A DNA stretch of 63,244 bases, the filler included, from Sluysia triapertura (taxonomy: Eukaryota), in NCBI GenBank assembly GCA_046118255.1. It is 5 parts of 5 records of this genome, joined end to end, with 100 filler letters (N's around TTAATTAATTAA, not from the genome) between each part and the next. Parts side by side here need not be neighbours in the genome. Positions count along the whole stretch, not along the records: positions 1 to 13,231 come from JBJNIA010051228.1; 4 more parts are not named here. The stretch is one strand, 5' to 3'. The position numbers were made by a program, and so were the translations under genes. Position 1 is the stretch's first letter, and each line of letters opens with the position of its first letter. The notes beneath the pieces were generated by a model. That model did not search any database. It was not told the origin of the DNA and saw only the letters and a list, made by a program, of their open reading frames with translations. This document shows, piece by piece, positions 594 to 12,730 of this stretch.

Positions 594-602
594 ACAATAT
601 CG
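594..602 (+). CDS. 9-nt micro-exon ACA ATA TCG (TIS)
   Basis: tttcag|ACAATATCG|gttaat; paralog at 4176-4184. Confidence 0.7.
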
Positions 603-3600
603 GTTAATTATTATTTAATTCAAATTTTTGTTCTTATACAAATAATAAATAGTCATAGTAAAAGTAATTGTACAATTTTAATTTTAGACACAACCACCTA
701 AGGTAAATTTATTTTATTAAAATACAACTTATAATGATGAAATAATTAACAATACTATTTTACTTTCCAAATGTTTACTAAATTTTGATTTTAAAGTTTT
801 GTATTGTTCGTCTTCTTTTGTTAAATGAAACAGAATCTGCATGAGTTTTCATAAGGGTGCATTAATTTCTTGGTATTTCTTAACTCCACGAATCGTGTTT
901 TACATAGTTTCCAATATACAAATGGAATAATAATTTTTTGTTAACAGAATTGTATTTTGTATGTGATTTACGTATTAAAATTCTTAATTATCCAACGTTG
1001 AATTACATTTGAAGCAACTGTTATTGCGGATAAATTATTTTTGCTTTCAAAATATTAAATATACAGTTAAGAGTGTGTTGGAAATATATTTAACTAGTTC
1101 TATACTTTGCTGTTTTTACAAAATTTATTTATCTGTTATTCCGTTGTGTTGAGAAATTATAATTGTATAAAAAAATGTATAGTTTTTAAATATTATTCAT
1201 CTGAAACAATTAATGCAAATGTAATGCTTTATGTGGAACTTATCCCTTTAGGAAATAATACAAATTTGATAAAAAAATTCATTCAATTCATTGCTTTATA
1301 AGTGATATTATGTATAAAATTAAATAAATATATAAATTCAGGCAGCACCGGTTAGTATGTAGTGAATATTTTTTACCATTTATTCATTTACTACCTTTTT
1401 TGTAATTCTACCAAAATATTTTTACGATGATTTTCATTTAAATCTAGGCTGTAGGTGCAAGTCAAGGTTATGGGGTAAGCATTAAAAGTTTTATTGAAAT
1501 TTCATTCATTTAATTTAAACTAGATTTTCATAAATATTATAAATATGGTATTTATATGTTAATTTGTATTGGTTTATATAAGGAATCGATTTATTGGACA
1601 ATCTTATAAAAAATAATTGTATCGATTAAATAAAATTTTTTGGATAAGTTTTAAGTATTTTATAAATATTTTCTTAATATTGTGACAATTGGTATACTAT
1701 TTGGAACTTATCGCTTTTGAATTCTTAAAATTTAGTAATATATTTCACCGAATTAATTGCTTTATTATTGATATTGAATGTAGTATTTATTAAATATATA
1801 AATTTCCGGCAACAGTGCTTGGTATTAATTGAATTCCTATTTTTCTAATTCAATCAATATATATTCGCACTTAGACTGTAGGTATAAGTCAAGGTTTTGG
1901 GATTAGCTTTAAAATTTTTATTGTATTTTGATAGATTCCTCAAACACTATTGAAATATCATAACAGGTCAAAATGCAATGTTTAGAATATATTAGATATA
2001 GACATCCATAAATTTCTATTTGTAAAGATATTTAATATAGTTCATTGGCCAGTGTGAAATAATTTTACTGCGAAATGAAGTTTATATTTCAAGTTTTGAA
2101 TATTACAATAATTAGAATTAAATGTCTGAAAATAATTAAATTTTTAATTTATCACTAAATATATGTTCTTTTAATAACAAAGATTTGTTATCAATTCTTG
2201 TTACTTTATAGAATTTTTATGTTTACGTAGATATATTGTGAAAAAGGTAAAGTAATAGAATAAAAATAAAAACTTAAAGTGAGTTCACCAACGTACTGGG
2301 CTTACCAGCTAGGCTCAGCCGTTGGATTTTCTTGATAAGTTAATAGTAAGTAAGTCTCAAAGAATATAATATATGCTAAATGACTCTAAAAATGCTTGAT
2401 CTTCTGGAGGCAATTAAATTTCAAAATACTTTAATAATACTTAAATTTATAAATAGATTTTACGTTGATTCCTTTATACGGAATCTTTGAAAATGATTTT
2501 TCGTAGCTAGTAATAAATACTAGCGGTTGAAAGCATGAAACAGAACGAAAGATTTTATAATTAAAACTATGTAATTTATAATAACAAAAGTCAAAAGGTT
2601 TTTGTAATTTATTCTTAAGAGAAAAACGTTAATAAGGTACAATGATACATATAATTTACACAAATTAACTAATTCAGTTAATTTTCTTACTAAGAGATTT
2701 TAATGATAATGATTTTGCGTATATATCTGTGAAAAGATCCAATAATTCTGTACAGAAATTTACGTGTATTTTACTTATGATACTTCACAGTATCTTCCTT
2801 AACAGTAATTAACTAACGTGATCAAAATTTTTAAAATGCGTCTTCAATGAAATCGTTGCAACTGTTAGAAATTGTTGGAATAAAACTAATAACTGGAACT
2901 GTGTACTAAAATTGTTGAAAAGAATTTGTCGAAATTAAATTGAACTGTAAAATAGAATTGTGAATTGTCTTAAAATTTATTGCTTTATAAAGTGTCAATT
3001 CGGCCCTGACTGAATTGAAACAAAGTTAATAATTAAAACAAAATCTAAAATAATTTTAAAGATTTTTTTCGCTCACATTAATTTAAGAACTTCAATTAAT
3101 ATTTTAATATTTTAGTAAATTATAAAATCAAATAAAAATTGCATATTTAAAAGAAAAATCAAAAATTACTTTTATAAAATTTGAAATATCCAAATTCAAA
3201 AATTAAATTCCAAATGAATGTCTACAGCTGTTTAAAAATCAATAAAAATATATAATTGTTTACTTATAGTTACAAATATAGTGCATTGACGTCAATAAGC
3301 ATTGTGTATATTAAAGATATTTTAAGCCTATGTAAATATCAATGTAACTTATTTTCTCAATTTTAAATTAATGTTAAATTGTAATAAATTTTTATCGCTA
3401 ATTAAGGAAATAAAAAATCAATATTAATTCAAAATCATATTTATTACTTTAATATTTTACTGATATAGTTAGAATTTCAATTTACTATGATACTTCCTTG
3501 CTACTAAGCATTCTTTTCTTAATTTTATATTACGATTTAAATGAGAAATGTCACACATTATTGTCATGTATAACTGCATGTGAAAATAGTTTTAAATAAA

Positions 3601-6600
3601 ATTTCATAAAAATTTAAATGCTGTAATATTAATTCACTTAATATTAAGTATATTAAAAGATACATAATATAATCACTTACATTAATTGGCCCAAAAATAT
3701 TAATTTCTTATAGTTTTGTTATAATGAAAATATAATTAGTATTTCAATATTTTTTCGGGTAAAATCGATTAAGGTTATTTTAATTTTTTTATAATAATTG
3801 TAGAATAAAGTAAATAACTTTGCTTTCATCTGGCATCCTCTATGATTGATTTGTTTCATCAAATTTCATGAGGAATTCAATTTTAATAATAATCATTTCG
3901 CATTTTAAAACAAATATTTAAATGAATTCTCTTTTATTATAAGTATATAATATTTTTTCAGATGCCTTCAGCTAAGGTATTTAATACTATTTGAATTATT
4001 TTAATTTCATTTTCTACATGTAGTTTTTATTTTGAGCAGAAAAATATTTAAAATTTATTTATCGAAATTATTAAATTATCATTAACAATAATATAAATAA
4101 GGAAATAATTTAATTATTAATAATTTTCAGTTTTTTATTGTCGTTCAATAAAATTCTTATAATATTTATTATCAGACGATATCGGTTAATTAATATTTAA
4201 TAATATTTTGTTCTTATTCAAATAATAAATAGTCGTGGTGAAATTAATTGTATAATTGTAATTGTAGATGCAACCATCTAAGGTAAATTCATATTATTAA
4301 AATATGATTTATAATGATGGAATAATTAACTAAGAAAATTACTTTCGAAATTTGTACTAAGATTTGATTCTTTTCTTGTGTTAAGGGAAATAGGATGTGA
4401 ATGAGTTTTCATAAGGGTACATTAATTTCTTGGCATTTCTTAACTCATCATGGTTATCAGGAAATAATTATTAATTAGGTAATCTACATTGATTGACTGA
4501 AATTCAGGTGTCCTTGATTGACTTAATGAATTATTAATGACATTCATTTTGTGAAATTGTGTTTCTAATGCTAGGTGTTTTCTTAATCTAAAACTTAACT
4601 TGCAGCAAAATAAATTATTATTCTGAGTCCGTTTACAGTATTCGACTTACTAATGGCGTACCTGTAAAATTGCGTGAAAACTATTATCAAGATTAATTGT
4701 ACAAAATACTCTTTGCTTTACCTTAATCAATAATGGGCAAAATCTTCGTTTATGTCAACTAATACTAAATAGCTTATAAACTAATCAAGACCAACGCTGA
4801 CCTATGGAATATCAGAATTAATATAAAAATCAAGTGAATAATATTTGTATATAAATTTGTCGTTTCTTATATCTTCAAATCTTAATGACCGTTAGAACTT
4901 TGTAGTTTTTTATTAAAATTTAATGAAACAATATTGGAATCAATGTATTTTCGATAAAAAGTATATTTCAGTATAAATTGATCGTAGTGTACGGTAATGT
5001 TAGGATAATTATAATAAAAACAAGATTTGAAAATTTTTTAATACTTTTATTACACAAAATTAAGATTAAAAATGAAATTTATTATAAATTTATAAAATTC
5101 AATAAAAGCGACAGTCAACAACACAAAAATTTTATAAATGATAAATTTATAATAACAATAATAATTAAACTATAATAAGGGTTTAGCCGAGAGACTCTAC
5201 CCTATAATAAAGATTTTATAATTGACCTTTAGGACCAACTAAAGATTGGAGAATATATATATTAGATTGATTTTATGATTGGCTTTAATGATCACCCGTG
5301 CAAAACAGTAATTTAAGTTTATATTGTAGCTCAATGAGAGTTTGCACACTATGTAAATCAAACTTACGGATCACTTAGTAATATAGACAATCTATCTCCA
5401 GCAATATCGTTTGAATTTGAATTTATCTGTTGAGCCTCTTATCGAATACGCGGGAATCGCACAATAACTGAAATGATGGATGTGAAACCTTTGTACACAA
5501 ATAGTTTAATAATAAATTTGATGATGACAAGCCGAATGATGTCGAGAATAATTTTTTCTAGCAACTTTATTTTCCGAAATCACGAATTTCAAAATGGCGT
5601 AAAACAATTCTCTTTGTTCATATTTAATGGCGTTTTTGCTTTATGTATGTACAAAGACATCTTTTAACATTTGATTTACATAAACAAATTTATTTCTATA
5701 AGTTTCTTTTGAGTTATTTTTTGATTTATAATAATCATAATTTTAATTTTATTATAATTAAAATAATAATTTTTTAAATAATACAATTTTAATAATTTTT
5801 TTATAATTTTATTTTTACAAAAAACCATAAAAAATATAAAAATAAGATTTTTTACACCTTTACACTAACAATGGTTTGTGTCATTCTTTTCCTTTGCACA
5901 TTTACTGTTAGAAAGCAATCAAAACCATTAGATAATTAGCTGTTTCCAATATACATATAGGATAATAATTTTTTGTTGAAAAGTTGTATTTATATCTGAT
6001 TTATCTATTAGAATTCTAAATTTTTCAACGTTGAATTACATTTAAAGCAACTATTATTTGACGATAAATTATTTTTTAAATATACAGGTAATAGTGTAAG
6101 TTGATCAGAGGTCCCGCTTTTTCACAATTTGTCCCGCTATTAAATAGTATCTCTGAAATATATTTAACTTTGCCCTTTTATAAAATTTATCGATCAGTTA
6201 TTCCGTTGCACAATTATTGAACAATTGTGTTATTTTATAAATTATATTCATCTGAAACAATTCATGAAAATGTAATGCCTTATGTGGAACTTATCCTTTT
6301 AGGAAATAGTTAAAATTAATAAGAATTACATCCTATTAAATGCTTTATAAGTGATATTGAATATAATACTTAATGATTATATAAACTTTAGGCAGCATCA
6401 GTTAGTATTTAGTAATTATTATTTACCATTTACTCATTTTCGTACTCATTTACTTCCATTTTTGTAATTCTACCAATATACTTTTTACGATATCCTTTTC
6501 ATTTAATCTAGGCTGCAAGTGCAAGTCAAGCTTATGGGGTAAGTGTTTAAAGTTTATTCAAAATTCATTTATTTAATTTAAACTTGTCTTTTATAAATAT

Positions 6601-9600
6601 AATAAATATAGTATTTTATATGTTAATTCGCATTGGCAAGTATAATGAATTTATATGTAAGTTCAATCTTTGGAAAAGAATTGTGTCGATGAAATGAAAT
6701 TCTTTTTGCAATTTTTGTAAACTATCTGAAAATATTAGTGACAATATTATGTTATTTGGAACATGTTATTTTAGGAAATAATTAAAATTTAATAATAGAA
6801 TTACATCAAATTTATTGCTTTATCAATCATATTCAATATATATTCAGGCAGCATCGGTTAGTATTTACTGAATATTCTTTACCATTCCTTTTTGTAATTC
6901 TATCAAAATAATTTAATTATCTATTATATTGTCTTTTAGACTGCAGGTGTGAGTCAAGAATATCGAGTTAGCTATTTTTTTCTTTTTAATTTTCAATATA
7001 TAATCATCTTAAATAAAACAGTTGTATTATTTATTTTAAGTAACATTTCAAATAAAGAAATAAGAGTTATGATGTTGATGGTGATGCTCATGATAACTAT
7101 TATCAAGCTTATGCTTATAATAAATTGATCTAATCATTATTTATTTGATTTAATCCTCAATATTTCTGTGCTATATTTCTCTAATATCATCATCAATTCC
7201 ACCTACATACGGTTCCACGGTTTTAACATTCTCTGGACATTATCACAAACTTTCAACTTCAATTGATTTTTAAAATATAAGATTCCGTAAAAAATTGTAT
7301 TTATTTTATATATAATATTCATAGGAAAAATTTATTGAAAATGTAATTTCGAATTTTTCGTTTTATGAAATAATTAAAATTTAGTAAAAGAAAGACGTCA
7401 AAATCATAATTTTATAAATGATATTGAATATAATATTTAATAATTATATAAACTTTAGGCAGCATCGGTTAGTATTTAGTGATTATTATTTACCATTTAC
7501 TCATTTTCGTACCCATTTACTTCCATTTTTGTAATTCTACCAATATACTTTTTACGATATCCTTTTCATTTAATCTAGGCTGCAGGTGCAAGTCAAGGTT
7601 ATGGGGTAAGCGTTAAAAGTTTTATATAAATGTCATACATTTATTTTAAATTTTATTTATTTATTTTGCATTGGTAAATATAATGAATTGATACAATATG
7701 AATAAATCTATTTTGATTATTATCATTATAATTTAAAATTGACTTTGTTTATAAAGTAAATTCGAATAATTGTCTTTATTTTGATAAGATAAATTATTGC
7801 ATTGAATTTTATTCTGTACTTCAATCTTAGTTTTATGAATAGCATAATAAAATAACTGAATAATAATTTATAAAAATATACCTAATTAGTTTTAAATTTT
7901 ACTCTTGTCTTTGATTAAGTTTTAGAAACATTTTTTAACCAAGTGCTAAGTTGTTTATAAATAAATATTAAACATTGTGTTTGGAACTCAAAGCTTAATA
8001 AAAAATTTATGAGACATACGTATAATTTGCATGAAAGTAATAATAATGATATTATTGAACATGATATCTGAAAATAATTTTCTACACTTCAGCCGTCAGA
8101 GGTTAGGTTTACATTTGTAAACGTCATTAGTTACGTTTTTAGAAATATTATTTTAATTTTTTTATGCGTATTCTATATATTAGGGTACAATATATAAAGT
8201 TATAGGTGCTAATATACCTGAAAGTTTTGCACAGTAAATGATGTTATTTAATTTTAATTTATAAAATAAATTAATTTATATATGTTCTAATATATCCAAA
8301 CGTGCATTTATTTGATATAATTGTAAAAGCTTTTAGGTCTAATTCATTAAGATATTTTCATTAACCATAAATCAAATTTTTGTTAAATCATATCCATCTG
8401 TGTAATTTTATTGAACTGCAAACACTTATTGAAAATGCAATGTATAGAATATATTAGATAGAGACCTCGATAAATTTGTATTTATAAAGATATTTAATAT
8501 AGTTTATTCGCCAGTGTGAATTAATTTTACTACTAAATGAAGTTTATATTTCAATTTTTGAATATTACAACAATTAGAATTAAATGTCTGAAAATAATTA
8601 AATTTTTAATTTATAACTAAATATATGTTCTTTTGATAAAATTGATTGAGATTAGTCAAAGATTTGTTATCAATTCTTGTTACTTTATACTACTTTTACG
8701 TTTAGTAGATATTCACATTATAACCCTATGTAAATTTCAATGTAACTGATTTTCTCAATTTCAAGGTAATGCGACATTGTAATAAATTTCTATCGCTAAT
8801 TAAGGAAATAAAAATTAATGATAATTCAAGATTTAATATTTTACTGTTATAGCTAGAATTTCAATTTACTCTGATATATTCTAGCTTATAAGCATTCCTT
8901 TCATATTACAGTAATGTCAGAAAATATTTTTAAATAAAATTTCTTAAACAATTTAAATGCTATTACGTTAATTTTATATTAATTACATTAAGTTTATGAC
9001 AAGATTAATATTATCCTCACTCATATTTGTTGATCCAAAAATATTAATTTTTTTTCATTTTTTTATAACCACATTATTTATAACCATAATATATTTAATA
9101 ATTCAATGTATTTTCAGGTACAATCAATTAAGGTTTTTTTTTAATTTTTATAATAAATGTAGAATTAATTAAATAACTTTGTTTTCACATGACATAAGCT
9201 AGGATTAATGTGTTTCCTTCACTTTCGTGAATATTCCTTTTTTTCTGGATTGAGTTTTAATATTTTTATTCAAATTTTATACAATCTCGTTGAATCTTTT
9301 TTGTATTTTTAGTTTTTTTCACTTGATTTTCATAAATATTATTTAAGTGTATTTTATCTTTTGATTAGTATTGGTAACTATATGTAATTGATACCACATA
9401 AACATTCGAATGTGATTATTATAATTATAATAAAAATATTTATAAATTAATTTCGATCTAACATTTATTACTTTCATACGATAAATTATTCACTCGAATT
9501 TTTTTCGGTACACTTATTTTGACTTTAAAATAACAACAAAATAAATGAACCTTTGACTACATTTTACTCTTTAAATATCTTATCGGTATTGTTAATATGC

Positions 9601-11370
9601 AGCACTATCTTTCTCTAAGAATTGTGTCGATATGTTATAACTCATTAACCTAATTTTAATATTACTTAAAATGCAATGCTTTATTGGAGCTTATCGTATT
9701 TAGGAAATAATAAAAATTTGATAAAATTATATCTATAATTCATTGCTTTCTAACTGCTATTGAATGTATTATTCAACAATTATATAAACTTTAGGCAGCA
9801 TCGGTTAGCATTAATGAATATTATTTACCATTTACTCATTAACTTTCGTTTTTTGTAATTCAATGAAACTCTCTTTTAGACTGAAGGTCTAAGTCAAGAT
9901 TATCGGTTTAGTTGTTATAACGCACAATATTTTTTTTAAATTTCAGTATAATAATCCTTATTATACTATTCTTTAATTGATTAAATTTATTTATTGAAAA
10001 TTCATTTCCAGTTTGATGTTTAGTTTCATATCAGACATTGCTGCATCAAACTTTGTGTGACTCATAATATTATCAACAACATTCCTAGTTTAAATCGTAC
10101 ATTCCTTAAAAATTTCATAGGTTTTCTTATAAATTCATCCTACAAATCATCCACATACTCAAATAAATAACATGAATACAAACACGGCTTGTGGTATCGA
10201 CTTCATGGCAACAGGTAAAAGAAGAAAATTCTCACAAATTGCAGTCCATTTAACAAACCCATCCTACAGATCGTCTAAAACTCAAATAAATTATGCTTTT
10301 AAAATATTAAAAAGATTACATTTTGGAAGTATTACAGGTTAGACATAGAGTATACTTAAATTCCCAATGAAATACATAATGATTAAAACAACTATTAAAA
10401 CAAGTAAATTCATCAGAATACTAATTGATGCTACCTATAAACAAATTTTATATATTTTATAAAAATATTCGTATGAAATATTAGGGAAATTTAATCCTTT
10501 ATTGAGAACTTATTCTTTTAGGAAATAATACGAATTGATAAAAAAATTACGTAAAATTTTAACTGATATTGAATATAATATCTAATTATATAAACTGCAG
10601 GCAGCATCGTTTAGTATTATTGAATATTATTTATCGTTTACTCATTAACTTCCTTTTTTGAAATTCAATGAACATAATTTTTCGATATTTTTTTAATATA
10701 TAGGCTGCAGGTGCAAGTCAACGTCATGGCGTTAGCTTTAAAATGTTTATTCAAATTTCGTACAATCTGCTTTAATCACTTTTTCAATATTCATTTATTT
10801 TAAACTTGATTTTCATAAATATTATAAACATTATTTTTATATTAATTAGTATTGGTAATACAAGGAATTTATAACCACATAAATAATTCGAATGTGATTA
10901 TTATCACTATAATTTAAAAGTGACTTTGTTTATAAAGTAAAGTCTAACCAACATTTGTTACGATATGTTTTTGAATTGAATTTTATTTTAAGAATAAAAT
11001 AATAGCATAATAAAGCAACTAAGTAGAAAAATTTATTTAATTAGTTTTAGATTTCCTATTATTTCCAATATTATTGCTCCTGTTGTTACGTACCTCTACT
11101 TAAAAATAATTTTAACGAAGTTTTAAGTTGCTTATAAATATTGAGTAATATGTGTTGTGTAATTTTATGCATTGTACTCAGATCCTAAAGTTTAGTCAAA
11201 AATTTAAATGAAACATACGTAATAATTTGTACGAAATTAGTAATTATAATATTATTGAATATTATCTGAAACAATTTTACATACTTCAGCCATCAGAGGT
11301 TAGCGTTACGTTTTTAGAAATAGTTTTACTATTTTAAGCGTATTCTAAATATTAGAATATAATATATAAA
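594..11370 (+). CDS. Putative micro-exon gene (partial; start and stop exons not identified) encoding a low-complexity Ala/Ser/Gly/Gln/Tyr/Lys repeat protein
   Basis: 18 exons of 9, 15 or 27 nt, each between (c/t)ag and gt, totalling 276 nt = 92 codons. Only phase 0 is stop-free. Differences between paralogous short exons fall mainly at synonymous third positions. Confidence 0.75.
688..702 (+). CDS. 15-nt micro-exon (TQPPK)
   Basis: ttttag|ACACAACCACCTAAG|gtaaat; paralog at 4268-4282. Confidence 0.75.
1342..1350 (+). CDS. 9-nt micro-exon (AAP)
   Basis: ttcag|GCAGCACCG|gttagt. Confidence 0.75.
1448..1474 (+). CDS. 27-nt micro-exon (AVGASQGYG)
   Basis: tctag|GCTGTAGGTGCAAGTCAAGGTTATGGG|gtaagc. 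Confidence 0.8.
1809..1901 (+). pseudogene. Dead micro-exon dyad: 9-nt copy 1809-1817 and 27-nt copy 1875-1901 (TVGISQGFG)
   Basis: 9-nt copy flanked by cg and ct instead of ag and gt; 27-nt copy keeps tag but its donor reads attagc. Confidence 0.6.
2288..2325 (+). other. GC-rich hairpin, copy 1
   Basis: ccaacg-ta-ctgggctta-(ccagc)-taggctcag-c-cgttgg. Confidence 0.55.
3759..3773 (+). pseudogene. Dead 15-nt micro-exon (VKSIK)
   Basis: ttttcgg|GTAAAATCGATTAAG|gttatt; acceptor cag mutated to cgg relative to paralog 9118-9132. Confidence 0.55.
3962..3976 (+). CDS. 15-nt micro-exon (MPSAK)
   Basis: ttttttcag|ATGCCTTCAGCTAAG|gtattt. Confidence 0.7.
4176..4184 (+). CDS. 9-nt micro-exon (TIS)
   Basis: atcag|ACGATATCG|gttaat; synonymous ACA/ACG difference from 594-602. 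Confidence 0.7.
4268..4282 (+). CDS. 15-nt micro-exon (MQPSK)
   Basis: ttgtag|ATGCAACCATCTAAG|gtaaat. Confidence 0.75.
6392..6400 (+). CDS. 9-nt micro-exon (AAS)
   Basis: ctttag|GCAGCATCA|gttagt. Confidence 0.75.
6512..6538 (+). CDS. 27-nt micro-exon (AASASQAYG)
   Basis: tctag|GCTGCAAGTGCAAGTCAAGCTTATGGG|gtaagt. Confidence 0.8.
6848..6856 (+). CDS. 9-nt micro-exon (AAS)
   Basis: ttcag|GCAGCATCG|gttagt. Confidence 0.75.
6940..6966 (+). CDS. 27-nt micro-exon (TAGVSQEYR)
   Basis: cttttag|ACTGCAGGTGTGAGTCAAGAATATCGA|gttagc. Confidence 0.7.
7459..7467 (+). CDS. 9-nt micro-exon (AAS)
   Basis: ctttag|GCAGCATCG|gttagt. Confidence 0.75.
7579..7605 (+). CDS. 27-nt micro-exon (AAGASQGYG)
   Basis: tctag|GCTGCAGGTGCAAGTCAAGGTTATGGG|gtaagc. 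Confidence 0.8.
8093..8101 (+). CDS. 9-nt micro-exon (PSE)
   Basis: cttcag|CCGTCAGAG|gttagg; paralog 11290-11298 differs only by synonymous CCG/CCA. Confidence 0.7.
8184..8198 (+). CDS. Possible 15-nt micro-exon (GTIYK)
   Basis: attag|GGTACAATATATAAA|gttata; lies 82 nt after the PSE exon like the other dyads; weak donor. Confidence 0.4.
9118..9132 (+). CDS. 15-nt micro-exon (VQSIK)
   Basis: ttttcag|GTACAATCAATTAAG|gttttt. Confidence 0.65.
9795..9803 (+). CDS. 9-nt micro-exon (AAS)
   Basis: ctttag|GCAGCATCG|gttagc. Confidence 0.75.
9880..9906 (+). pseudogene. 27-nt micro-exon with lost in-frame donor (TEGLSQDYR)
   Basis: cttttag|ACTGAAGGTCTAAGTCAAGATTATCGG|tttagt. Confidence 0.55.
10601..10609 (+). 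pseudogene. 9-nt micro-exon with lost in-frame donor (AAS)
   Basis: ctgcag|GCAGCATCG|tttagt. Confidence 0.55.
10704..10730 (+). CDS. 27-nt micro-exon (AAGASQRHG)
   Basis: tatag|GCTGCAGGTGCAAGTCAACGTCATGGC|gttagc. Confidence 0.7.
11290..11298 (+). CDS. 9-nt micro-exon (PSE)
   Basis: cttcag|CCATCAGAG|gttagc. Confidence 0.7.
11356..11370 (+). CDS. Possible 15-nt micro-exon (NIIYK)
   Basis: attag|AATATAATATATAAA|gttata; paralog of 8184-8198. Confidence 0.35.
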
Positions 11371-11947
11371 GTTATAGATGTTAATGTACCTGAACATTTC
11401 TAAATTAAAATTAAAGGCCATCATTAATTAATGATGTTATTTAATTTTAATTTATATATGTTCTAATTTATCCAAACATGCATTTATTTGATATCAATAT
11501 ATAAGTACTTTTAGGTTTAATTCATTAAGATGATTTCATTAATTATAAATTATATTTTGGTACATCATAACCCTACGTTTAATTTATTGAACCTCAAACA
11601 CTTATTGAAATAAAAGACAAATGAAAATGCAATGAATAGAATATATTAGATATAGACCTCGATAAATATATTTAATGCGATTTATTGGCCAGTGTGAACT
11701 AATTTTACTACGACATGAAATTTATATTTCAAATTTCGAATATTACAATAATTAGAATTAAACATCTGAAAATAGTTTAATTTTTTATACATTAGTATAA
11801 ATATGTTCTTTTAAAAAAATTATTAATATTAGTCAAAGATTTGTTATCAATTCTTTTTTACTTTATAGTATTTTTACGCAGATATTCTTATTTGTGAGAC
11901 AAAAGTTAATTTATTTGCTCGAGAATAAAGATGTGAATGTGAGTTCA

Positions 11948-11986
11948 CCAACGTATCTAGTCTTACTGGTTAGGGTTAGCCGTTGG
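11948..11986 (+). other. GC-rich hairpin, copy 2
   Basis: ccaacg-tat-ctagtctta-(ctggt)-tagggttag-c-cgttgg. Confidence 0.55.
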
Positions 11987-12730
11987 ATTTTTTAGAAGAA
12001 AATAACTGTCAATTAACAATATCAGTAATGCTTATTTGATTTATTAAGTGTATTTGTCTTTAAATTGCTTTCTTATAAATATTTTATCAGTTAAGCTTAC
12101 GAAAATCCTACTTTAAATAGGATATTTATAATAATTCACTATTTTTCGCTACCGATAAAAATTCGGATTAATAATTGATTTAAGGAATTTAATGATTTTG
12201 TGACTGTAACAATTTACAACGTTATTACTTTCAATTTTCTAATTTCTTTATGAATTTACGAATGATCCTTTAAACAGGATTGAAAACGTTTTAGATAATT
12301 TATGTGTATCGATGTTAAAGATCGGCTTTTATGAAAACTGATTTAATAAGTTTAGTGAATTATGTATATATTAACGGTTACAGTAAAAGAAAAAACAAAA
12401 GATTCTTACAATAATAATTATCAAAATTAAGTTTACTTGAATTAACTATAATAAAGTAATTTTAATTAAGATTTTACGAAGAATCTTTAAACGGTTCTAA
12501 AATACATTATATAATAATTTAAGTATATTTTACAAACGTACTAAAATGTACAGCAACTTAAGAATAATGAACTAACAAAATAGTCCAGAAATTTGGACCT
12601 TCGATGTTTAAATTTTTTAAACCAACTGTTGATAATAATTTTTAAAAACAAATGTTATGAGTTTTAGTTTTTAAAATGTTATGTATATATACTAATTTAC
12701 CTAACACTGAAACAATTAAAACAATTGATT

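What the first reader, a model, noticed from the sequence alone, without database searches (positions are those of the whole stretch)
594..11370. Dyad grammar: 9-nt exon + short intron + 15- or 27-nt exon is the unit of duplication
Seen: each 9-nt exon is followed after a short intron (85, 97, 83, 111, 83, 111, 82, 76, 94 and 57 nt) by a fixed partner: TIS with xQPxK, AAS with the 27-nt xxxxSQxxx exon, and PSE with xxIYK. Dyads are separated by longer introns of about 0.2-2.5 kb. The AAS/27-nt dyad occurs seven times. Inference: removing the short intron first would create a 24- or 36-nt composite exon, which could explain how 9-nt exons are recognised and predicts that dyads are included or skipped together.
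Basis: partly seen in the sequence, partly recalled or inferred. Interest (0 to 1): 0.7.

Follow-up and report, generated by a model that had tools for sequence, protein, structure and literature searches.

The report
Paired micro-exons in a flatworm gene
The window holds a repeated locus built only of tiny 9-, 15- and 27-base exons, most likely a flatworm micro-exon gene. Every 9-base exon sits just upstream of a short intron and a fixed partner exon, but no RNA data were available to show how, or whether, it is spliced.

Summary
All ten dyads and all ten short-intron lengths (85, 97, 83, 111, 83, 111, 82, 76, 94, 57 nt) are exactly as described.

Across at least 20 further contigs of the same genome:
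- Exons and splice sites are conserved far better than introns.
- Exons never carry indels.

These are therefore real, selected micro-exons of a multi-copy family resembling flatworm micro-exon genes (MEGs).

- Two dyads in the third copy have a dead donor (GT changed to TT).
- The "seventh" AAS dyad is a decayed relic.
- A conserved unpaired 15-nt exon (MPSAK, 3962-3976) exists.
- The 3' end of the xxIYK exon is uncertain; it may be a terminal coding exon.

"Unit of duplication" is only partly right. Old tandem duplications of about 430-610 nt copied single AAS dyads. Later duplications copied whole multi-dyad modules. Partners also decay independently in about eight cases.

The splicing-order idea is plausible but untested, because the only run found was DNA. 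It restates a known mechanism: the exon-intron-exon unit, or downstream-intron-first splicing of microexons. I rate this a new member of a known kind, of moderate interest.

The parts
594..602 (+). 9-nt exon T9 (TIS), copy alpha; donor GTTAAT; followed by an 85-nt intron
   Evidence: conserved with AG/GT in 9 family copies
688..702 (+). 15-nt exon Q15 (TQPPK), partner of T9
   Evidence: frame 2 is closed by TAA in all copies
1342..1350 (+). 9-nt exon A9 (AAP); followed by a 97-nt intron
1448..1474 (+). 27-nt exon S27 (AVGASQGYG), G-type
1808..1901 (+). Decayed AAS dyad. The first member (about 1808-1820) has no AG acceptor. The 27-nt relic at 1875-1901 has AT in place of the GT donor.
3962..3976 (+). 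Unpaired 15-nt exon M15 (MPSAK). Its acceptor ttttttcag is conserved. The first codon is ATG in 6 and GTG in 2 of 8 family copies.
4176..4184 (+). 9-nt exon T9 (TIS), copy beta; followed by an 83-nt intron
4268..4282 (+). 15-nt exon Q15 (MQPSK)
6392..6400 (+). 9-nt exon A9 (AAS); followed by a 111-nt intron
6512..6538 (+). 27-nt exon S27 (AASASQAYG), G-type
6848..6856 (+). 9-nt exon A9 (AAS); followed by an 83-nt intron
6940..6966 (+). 27-nt exon S27 (TAGVSQEYR), R-type; the R-type forms a separate clade with 100/99 support
7459..7467 (+). 9-nt exon A9 (AAS); followed by a 111-nt intron
7579..7605 (+). 27-nt exon S27 (AAGASQGYG), G-type
8093..8101 (+). 9-nt exon P9 (PSE); followed by an 82-nt intron
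8184..8237 (+). I15 exon (GTIYK, 8184-8198) with an uncertain 3' end. The frame stays open to a stop at 8235-8237. The 33 nt after 8198 are better conserved than the exon itself.
9795..9803 (+). 9-nt exon A9 (AAS), copy gamma; followed by a 76-nt intron
9880..9906 (+). 27-nt exon S27 (TEGLSQDYR), R-type; the donor is TT, not GT
   Evidence: letters confirmed by the X1 contig over 9779-10131
10601..10609 (+). 9-nt exon A9 (AAS); the donor is TT, not GT; the nominal intron is 94 nt
   Evidence: the X1 contig over 10389-11386 shows no difference here
10704..10730 (+). 27-nt exon S27 (AAGASQRHG)
11290..11298 (+). 9-nt exon P9 (PSE); followed by a 57-nt intron
11356..11403 (+). I15 exon (NIIYK, 11356-11370). 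The frame is open to a stop at 11401-11403. An alternative GTTAAT donor lies after 11379.
1970..2234 (+). Family-specific non-exonic block D1, always found between I15 and M15. Other copies lie at 8432-8712 and 11610-11825.

Best explanation
What it is. The window is part of a tandemly repeated micro-exon locus on the + strand of a very AT-rich genome (about 22% G+C), most likely that of a flatworm. The coding sequence is built only of exons of 9, 15 and 27 nt, all multiples of three and all in phase 0.

The repeating module has this order:
- M15 (MPSAK), then an intron of about 200-300 nt
- T9 (TIS), then 81-121 nt
- Q15 (xQPxK), then 0.6-2.1 kb
- [A9 (AAS), 76-111 nt, S27 (xxxxSQxxx)], repeated 2-3 times
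- about 0.5 kb, then P9 (PSE), then 57-82 nt
- I15 (xxIYK...), then about 1.1 kb, then the next M15

The window holds three such copies: alpha (5' part), beta (complete) and gamma (3' part, with two dead donors).

Shown: the exons exist, are under selection, and every 9-nt exon has a short downstream intron and a fixed partner.

Inferred mechanism. A 9-nt exon is too short to be bound at both its splice sites at once. It would therefore be recognised through its 5' splice site and the short downstream intron (intron definition). That intron would be removed first. The resulting 24- or 36-nt composite would then be joined across the long upstream intron.

The dyads travel together in duplications simply because the two exons lie less than 150 nt apart, inside duplication units of at least 430 nt.
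For: Sequence pattern:
- Exact coordinates and intron lengths.
- AG-N9-GTTAR occurs 11 times against 2.75 expected.

Selection:
- Exon and splice-site identity is 0.81-0.94 with no gaps, against 0.52-0.57 for gap-ridden introns.
- AG and GT are kept in 17-18 of 18 units at all four sites.
- There are no true length variants among about 30 27-nt exons: the three hits of other length are the TT-donor exon at 9880, a copy cut by a contig end and a copy with a dead acceptor.
- Only frame 0 is open.

Family:
- It is present on at least 20 other contigs with the same exon order.
- All three independent 9-nt exon types have the short intron on their 3' side, and none of the four longer exon types has a downstream intron under 199 nt. 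The chance of that assignment is 1 in 35 if lengths were dealt at random among the seven types (my calculation).

Host organism:
- The assembly's AT-rich mitochondrial contig uses AAA for Asn, ATA for Ile and TGA for Trp, which is the flatworm/echinoderm code.

Literature:
- The operational MEG definition is in PMC7653826, and MEG features are in PMC4350168.
- PMC10250204 reports downstream-intron-first splicing of most SRRM4-dependent microexons and gives a steric explanation.
- PMC9313022, citing Sterner and Berget 1993, notes that mini-exons often lie next to a neighbouring exon across a short intron.
Against: - There is no transcript evidence at all. The only run holding the locus is DNA.
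- No signal-peptide-type first exon was found, although MEG products are said always to have one (PMC4350168).
- A composite exon of 24 or 36 nt is still far below the roughly 50-60 nt size said to be needed for exon definition. Downstream-first splicing alone therefore does not explain recognition.
- M15 (15 nt) manages without a 9-nt partner or a short intron.
- Partners decay independently in about eight family copies.
- The conservation contrast is partly inflated, because the units were picked by similarity to the exons.
Confidence: 0.6

Rival explanations
1. The dyad layout is historical baggage with no role in splicing. Each of the three dyad types arose once, for example by an intron splitting a 24- or 36-nt exon or by exonisation beside an existing exon. 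It was then simply copied along with its surroundings. The spliceosome of this organism would handle 9-nt exons by intron definition regardless of neighbouring intron length.
For: - All copies of each dyad type are homologous, so there are only three independent observations.
- Duplication blocks are always larger than a dyad.
- M15 is recognised without a partner, if it is real.
- 27-nt exons persist with intact sites after loss of the 9-nt exon.
Against: - Three non-homologous dyads share the same polarity (9-nt exon first) and the same intron size class. The chance of this is 1 in 35.
- Short-intron length stays within 45-121 nt across all family copies despite many indels.
Confidence: 0.3
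2. The three modules are separate small tandem genes, not repeats inside one long gene. On this reading I15 is a terminal coding exon (...IYKVIDVNVPENF, then a stop). M15, which usually starts with ATG, is the first coding exon, reached from an untranslated 5' exon or by spliced-leader trans-splicing. The PSE/xxIYK 'dyad' would then be a 9-nt exon plus the last exon.
For: - The 33 nt after I15 have 0.84 identity. That is higher than I15 itself (0.73) and the introns (0.71-0.74), and conservation drops to 0.55 afterwards.
- The frame stays open for 10-24 codons in 5 of 6 copies.
- The GTTATA donor is the weakest in the family.
- M15 begins with ATG in 6 of 8 copies, directly behind a conserved acceptor.
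- Spliced-leader trans-splicing is known in flatworms (PMC7653826).
Against: - The stop position is not conserved.
- The codon-position pattern is not that of coding sequence: the third position is the most conserved.
- GT after ...AAA is kept in all 8 copies, and a second GTTAAT donor 9 nt further on is kept in 4.
- Two M15 copies start with GTG.
- No 5' exon or signal peptide was found in the 1.1-kb spacer.
Confidence: 0.45
3. The locus is a dead or never-expressed repeat array (pseudogenes). The apparent exons would be relics of a gene that is active elsewhere in the genome.
For: - Copy alpha has a decayed dyad and lacks P9/I15.
- Copy gamma lacks M15/T9/Q15 and has two TT donors.
- High-copy repeats sit in the long introns.
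- There is no RNA evidence.
Against: - Copy beta (3962-8198) has 11 consecutive exons with intact AG/GT and an open frame.
- The conservation contrast between exons and introns and the absence of exon indels across about 20 contigs argue for ongoing selection.
Confidence: 0.12

Closest known systems
Micro-exon genes (MEGs) of parasitic flatworms (Schistosoma, Echinococcus, Hymenolepis)
   Same: - Long runs of consecutive exons shorter than 70 nt and divisible by three.
- Multi-copy, tandemly duplicated families.
- Transposon-rich loci.
- Mostly non-synonymous differences between copies.
- A flatworm host genome.
(PMC7653826; PMC4350168)
   Different: - No signal-peptide exon and no ordinary-sized first or last exon were found on this contig.
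- There is no transcript or proteomic evidence.
- No sequence homology to a named MEG family could be tested.
- The strict pairing of 9-nt exons with a short downstream intron is not mentioned in the MEG passages I read (two papers searched by term, not read in full).
[quoted passage not shown]
   Same: - A very short exon lies close to a neighbouring exon across a short intron.
- The proposal is that steric hindrance prevents both sites from being occupied at once, so one flanking intron goes first and enlarges the exon.
   Different: - Those cases were shown by experiment in vertebrates, and one depends on a tissue-specific factor.
- Here the order is only inferred.
- All exons of the gene are micro-exons, so the composite is still tiny.
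- The arrangement is repeated many times within one locus.
Olduvai (NBPF) exon doublets
   Same: Exon doublets and larger multi-exon blocks are duplicated as units inside a gene, with proposed splicing dependencies between neighbouring exons (PMC9313022).
   Different: This is a primate gene with exons of ordinary size. There is no micro-exon problem and no relationship in sequence.

Membership tests
Micro-exon gene (MEG), operational definition of PMC7653826 | Exons shorter than 70 nt with length divisible by three | tested here: met
   All 21 predicted exons are 9, 15 or 27 nt. There are no true length variants among about 30 family copies of the 27-nt exon: the three hits of other length are a shifted-donor, a truncated and a dead-acceptor copy. 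These are predicted exons, not transcript-verified.
Micro-exon gene (MEG), operational definition of PMC7653826 | [quoted passage not shown] | tested here: met
   Copy beta alone has 11 consecutive micro-exons with intact AG/GT, spanning 3962-8198. This holds whether the window is one gene or three.
Micro-exon gene (MEG), features in PMC4350168 | The product carries a signal peptide, encoded by a longer 5' exon | tested here: inconclusive
   No ATG-initiated hydrophobic exon with a phase-0 donor was found in the I15-M15 spacers or upstream of 594. The 5' end of the gene may lie off the 13-kb contig.
Micro-exon gene (MEG), features in PMC4350168 | Restricted to Platyhelminthes | tested here: met
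   The assembly's 14.9-kb mitochondrial contig has 22.5% G+C and uses AAA for Asn (6 of 6 informative sites), ATA for Ile and TGA for Trp, matching translation table 9. The link from this contig to the window rests on their sharing one assembly and the same base composition.
Micro-exon gene (MEG) | Transcripts vary by skipping of symmetrical micro-exons | not testable with these tools
   No RNA run was found. X1 consists of DNA contigs.
Exon-intron-exon unit / downstream-intron-first microexon splicing | The micro-exon lies next to a partner exon across a short intron | tested here: met
   In 10 of 10 9-nt exons in the window the partner lies 57-111 nt downstream. In family copies the distance is 45-121 nt.
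Exon-intron-exon unit / downstream-intron-first microexon splicing | The short (downstream) intron is removed before the long upstream one | not testable with these tools
   This needs nascent or partially spliced RNA reads.
Recursive-splicing exon (RS-exon) | Joining to the upstream exon recreates a 5' splice site, so the exon must begin with GT | tested here: not met
   The 9-nt exons begin with GC, AC or CC.

The most novel reading that the evidence does not exclude
In this flatworm lineage, exons of 9 nt may be tolerated only when they are followed by an intron of about 50-120 nt and a fixed partner exon. That would be an architectural rule that arose three times without detectable homology (TIS, AAS and PSE dyads) and that enforces downstream-first, stepwise assembly of an mRNA made entirely of micro-exons. 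If it is general for MEGs, it would give a testable answer to how spliceosomes recognise whole genes of micro-exons, and a rule for finding MEGs in unannotated genomes.
Probability: 0.25. Interest if true: 0.65.

Novelty: new member of a known kind. Interest (0 to 1): 0.45.

Why it matters
MEGs are a poorly understood class of flatworm genes, and gene finders usually miss them. PMC7653826 calls their curation across flatworm lineages a high priority. In the held literature, no paper links micro-exon genes with Protopolystoma, and only one unrelated review mentions them together with monogeneans.

This locus gives a clean, sequence-only example in which the exons can be defined by comparing paralogues. 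The consistent layout of a 9-nt exon, a short intron and a partner exon yields a concrete, falsifiable prediction about splicing order. Any RNA data set from the species could test it.

Tried and rejected
1. RNA evidence. Laying it on the window showed genomic contigs with no splice joints, so expression is untested.
2. Frame compensation. I first thought the two TT donors in copy gamma compensated each other. On recount, a shift to the GT one base upstream gives exons of 26 and 8 nt, the four exons sum to 70 nt, and the frame is not restored. I dropped the idea (notes 1 and 2).
3. Common origin of the three dyad types. Local alignments score no better than shuffles, apart from one weak pair.
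4. RNA structure in the short introns. The T9 and A9 introns fold no better than shuffles. Only the P9 intron has a modest hairpin, with z of -2.0 to -2.3.
5. Extra conserved micro-exons in the long introns. None has paralogue support.
6. A signal-peptide first exon in the spacers. None was found.
7. Rfam, tRNA and long-ORF scans of the window. Nothing was found.
8. Naming the species.
   - The protein atlas was uninformative.
   - The assembly size, the vertebrate mitochondrial DNA and the flatworm genetic code fit my recollection of Protopolystoma xenopodis (617 Mb).
   - The 5S-bearing contig numbers given in PMC12294053 do not match those found here.
   - The name therefore stays a guess.
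10. Protein homology. The joined (spliced) protein model was not searched. Single exons of 3-9 residues are below the minimum length of every protein tool, so homology to named MEG families is untested.
11. The recursive-splicing reading was rejected, because the exons do not begin with GT.
Full report
**Observation.** The window is 22-25% G+C throughout and has no long ORF, tRNA or Rfam match. There are ten 9-nt exons (two TIS, six AAS/AAP, two PSE). Each is followed, after 85, 97, 83, 111, 83, 111, 82, 76, 94 or 57 nt, by its fixed partner: xQPxK (15 nt), xxxxSQxxx (27 nt) or xxIYK (15 nt). All other introns measure 199 nt to about 2.5 kb.

**Is it more than chance?**
- AG-N9-GTTAR occurs 11 times against 2.75 expected, and 0 of 200 shuffles reach 11.
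- The same units occur on at least 20 other contigs of the same 619-Mb, 263,945-contig assembly.
- In an alignment of 18 AAS dyads, the 9-nt exon, the 27-nt exon and their splice sites have 0.81-0.94 pairwise identity and no gaps. The flanks and the short intron have 0.52-0.57, with gaps in 74-84% of columns. AG and GT are kept in 17-18 of 18 units at all four sites.
- The units were selected by similarity to the exons, which inflates this contrast. The absence of any true length variant in about 30 copies of the 27-nt exon does not depend on that choice; the only hits of other length were a shifted-donor, a truncated and a dead-acceptor copy.
- Frame 0 is free of stops in 72 of 73 intact exons. 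Frames 1 and 2 are closed in 9 and 21 of them.
- I conclude that these are real exons under selection, on the + strand.

**Corrections to the observation.**
1. In the third copy, the 27-nt exon 9880-9906 and the 9-nt exon 10601-10609 are followed by TT instead of GT. Contigs of an independent DNA run carry the same letters. Using the GT one base upstream would give exons of 26 and 8 nt and break the frame, so these are dead or crippled donors.
2. The "seventh" AAS dyad (about 1808-1820 and 1875-1901) is a relic that has lost an acceptor and a donor.
3. A further 15-nt exon, MPSAK at 3962-3976, has a strongly conserved acceptor in eight family copies and no 9-nt partner. Its first codon is ATG in six copies and GTG in two.
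4. The 3' boundary of the xxIYK exon is uncertain.
   - The GTTATA donor is weak.
   - A GTTAAT donor 9 nt further on is kept in four paralogues.
   - The frame runs on as ...KVIDVNVPENF to a stop at varying positions.
   - The 33 nt after the exon are better conserved (0.84) than the exon itself (0.73) or the neighbouring introns (0.71-0.74). Conservation then falls to 0.55.

**Architecture.** Self-comparison and exon maps of all family contigs show one recurring module: M15, T9-Q15, two or three A9-S27 dyads, P9-I15, then a spacer of about 1.1 kb holding a family-specific block (D1), then the next M15. The window contains three copies:
- **alpha**, 594 to about 2330. It has lost its P9-I15 dyad.
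- **beta**, 3962-8198. It is complete, with 11 exons, all intact.
- **gamma**, 9795-11370. It lacks M15, T9 and Q15 and has two dead donors.

The AAS dyads fall into two clades with 100/99 support:
- G-type ends in ...GYG with donor gtaagc, an intron of 94-111 nt and acceptor atctag.
- R-type ends in ...YR with donor gttagc, an intron of 76-84 nt and acceptor ttttag.

Within the G clade, three of the four window dyads pair with a dyad on another contig and none pairs with its neighbour; the fourth (10601) is unresolved.

**Unit of duplication.** The dyad was the unit only in old tandem duplications, with a period of about 430-610 nt in the window and 339-772 nt elsewhere. Later duplications copied multi-dyad blocks or whole modules. 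The TIS and PSE dyads were never duplicated on their own. Any unit of 430 nt or more must carry two exons that lie less than 150 nt apart, so co-duplication says little about function.

The partners are also not inseparable in evolution:
- Four 27-nt exons keep AG and GT although their 9-nt exon is deleted (C184187:3861 and 4416, C95001:6025, C124523:7001).
- Two TIS exons are intact beside a dead partner (C253689, C262980).
- Copy gamma has one dead donor in each of two dyads.
- Only one dyad (1808-1901) has decayed in both members.

**What supports a functional reading of the dyad.** The three dyad types show no detectable homology to one another. Yet all have the 9-nt exon first and an intron of 45-121 nt behind it. 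None of the four longer exon types has a downstream intron under 199 nt. If the three short introns were dealt at random among the seven exon types, this assignment has probability 1 in 35. That is suggestive, but it rests on three independent cases.

**Mechanism.** This is the known exon-intron-exon idea for mini-exons (Sterner and Berget 1993, as summarised in PMC9313022). It also matches the downstream-intron-first order measured for most SRRM4-dependent microexons, which the authors explain by steric exclusion of U1 and U2 on very short exons (PMC10250204). It is the most likely mechanism here too, but two points limit it:
- The composite is still a micro-exon.
- M15 apparently does without a partner.

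Intron definition along the whole gene is probably the more general explanation. The short introns show no special folding apart from a modest hairpin in the P9 intron. Recursive splicing is excluded because the exons do not start with GT.

[quoted passage not shown] Several further MEG traits are present (PMC4350168):
- multi-copy tandem organisation
- transposon-rich introns
- mostly non-synonymous differences between copies

The host genome is most likely a flatworm. The assembly's AT-rich 14.9-kb mitochondrial contig reads AAA as Asn, ATA as Ile and TGA as Trp. The assembly also contains vertebrate-type mitochondrial DNA, which suggests a parasite of a vertebrate. The species name (possibly Protopolystoma xenopodis) could not be established.

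The missing MEG hallmark is a signal peptide. None was found on this contig, but the true 5' end may lie elsewhere.

Whether the window holds one long modular gene or three small tandem genes remains open. I put the tandem-gene reading at about 45%.

**Not done.**
- No RNA run exists in the index for this locus, so expression, exon inclusion and splicing order are untested.
- The spliced protein model was not joined and searched. Single exons of 3-9 residues are too short for every protein tool, so homology to named MEG families is unknown.

**Verdict.** This is a new member of a known kind (a flatworm micro-exon gene family) with a neat and testable, but not new, idea about how 9-nt exons are recognised.

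Noticed in passing
window 2262-2345 (a diverged copy lies at about 11930-11998): An 82-nt G+C-rich element with a stable hairpin (-22.7 kcal/mol, z -2.9). It is a high-copy repeat of this genome: more than 2000 first-look candidates, of which 40 were scored at 90-97% identity. It looks like a SINE or MITE inserted in the spacer after the module.
   Followed up: partly
window 1970-2234, 8432-8712, 11610-11825: Block D1 is the best-conserved non-exonic stretch of the locus (92% between alpha and beta). It is specific to the family and always lies between I15 and the next M15. It contains a conserved short ORF (MKFIFQ...) without a usable donor. It could be a promoter or other regulatory region, or the result of recent gene conversion.
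   Followed up: partly
G000 contigs C219470, C200653, C192378 (loci L020-L022) versus C243991 (L025): The assembly holds several contigs with a vertebrate-type COX1 (about 46% G+C) beside the flatworm-code mitochondrial contig (22.5% G+C). Host DNA is therefore present in the assembly. If the genome is Protopolystoma xenopodis, this bears on the claim in PMC12294053 that frog contamination is absent.
   Followed up: partly
G000 contigs C37458 (L023) and C90747 (L024): There are extra flatworm-like COX1 copies. One is nearly intact on a contig with 25% G+C, and one is degenerate with many stops. They could be nuclear mitochondrial insertions or a second mitochondrial haplotype.
   Followed up: no
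window 5500-5897, 6097-6295, 9281-9479, 10276-10474: These stretches have very high summed contig depth in run X1 (about 850 to 30,000, against 20-150 elsewhere). The long introns therefore contain high-copy repeats or low-complexity DNA.
   Followed up: no
window 8102-8183 and 11299-11355: The P9-I15 short intron keeps a hairpin (z -2.3 and -2.0) in both copies, although one copy has a 25-nt deletion. The other short introns are unstructured.
   Followed up: partly
window 8199-8231 and 11371-11403: The 33 nt following the xxIYK exon are more conserved among 8 paralogues (0.84) than the exon itself (0.73).
   Followed up: partly
contigs C30542 (954-1250) and C202110 (1587-1880): In these two paralogues the xxIYK exon carries a 9-nt insertion and an in-frame stop, and both candidate donors further on are lost. 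This is a variant or dead form of the module's last exon.
   Followed up: no
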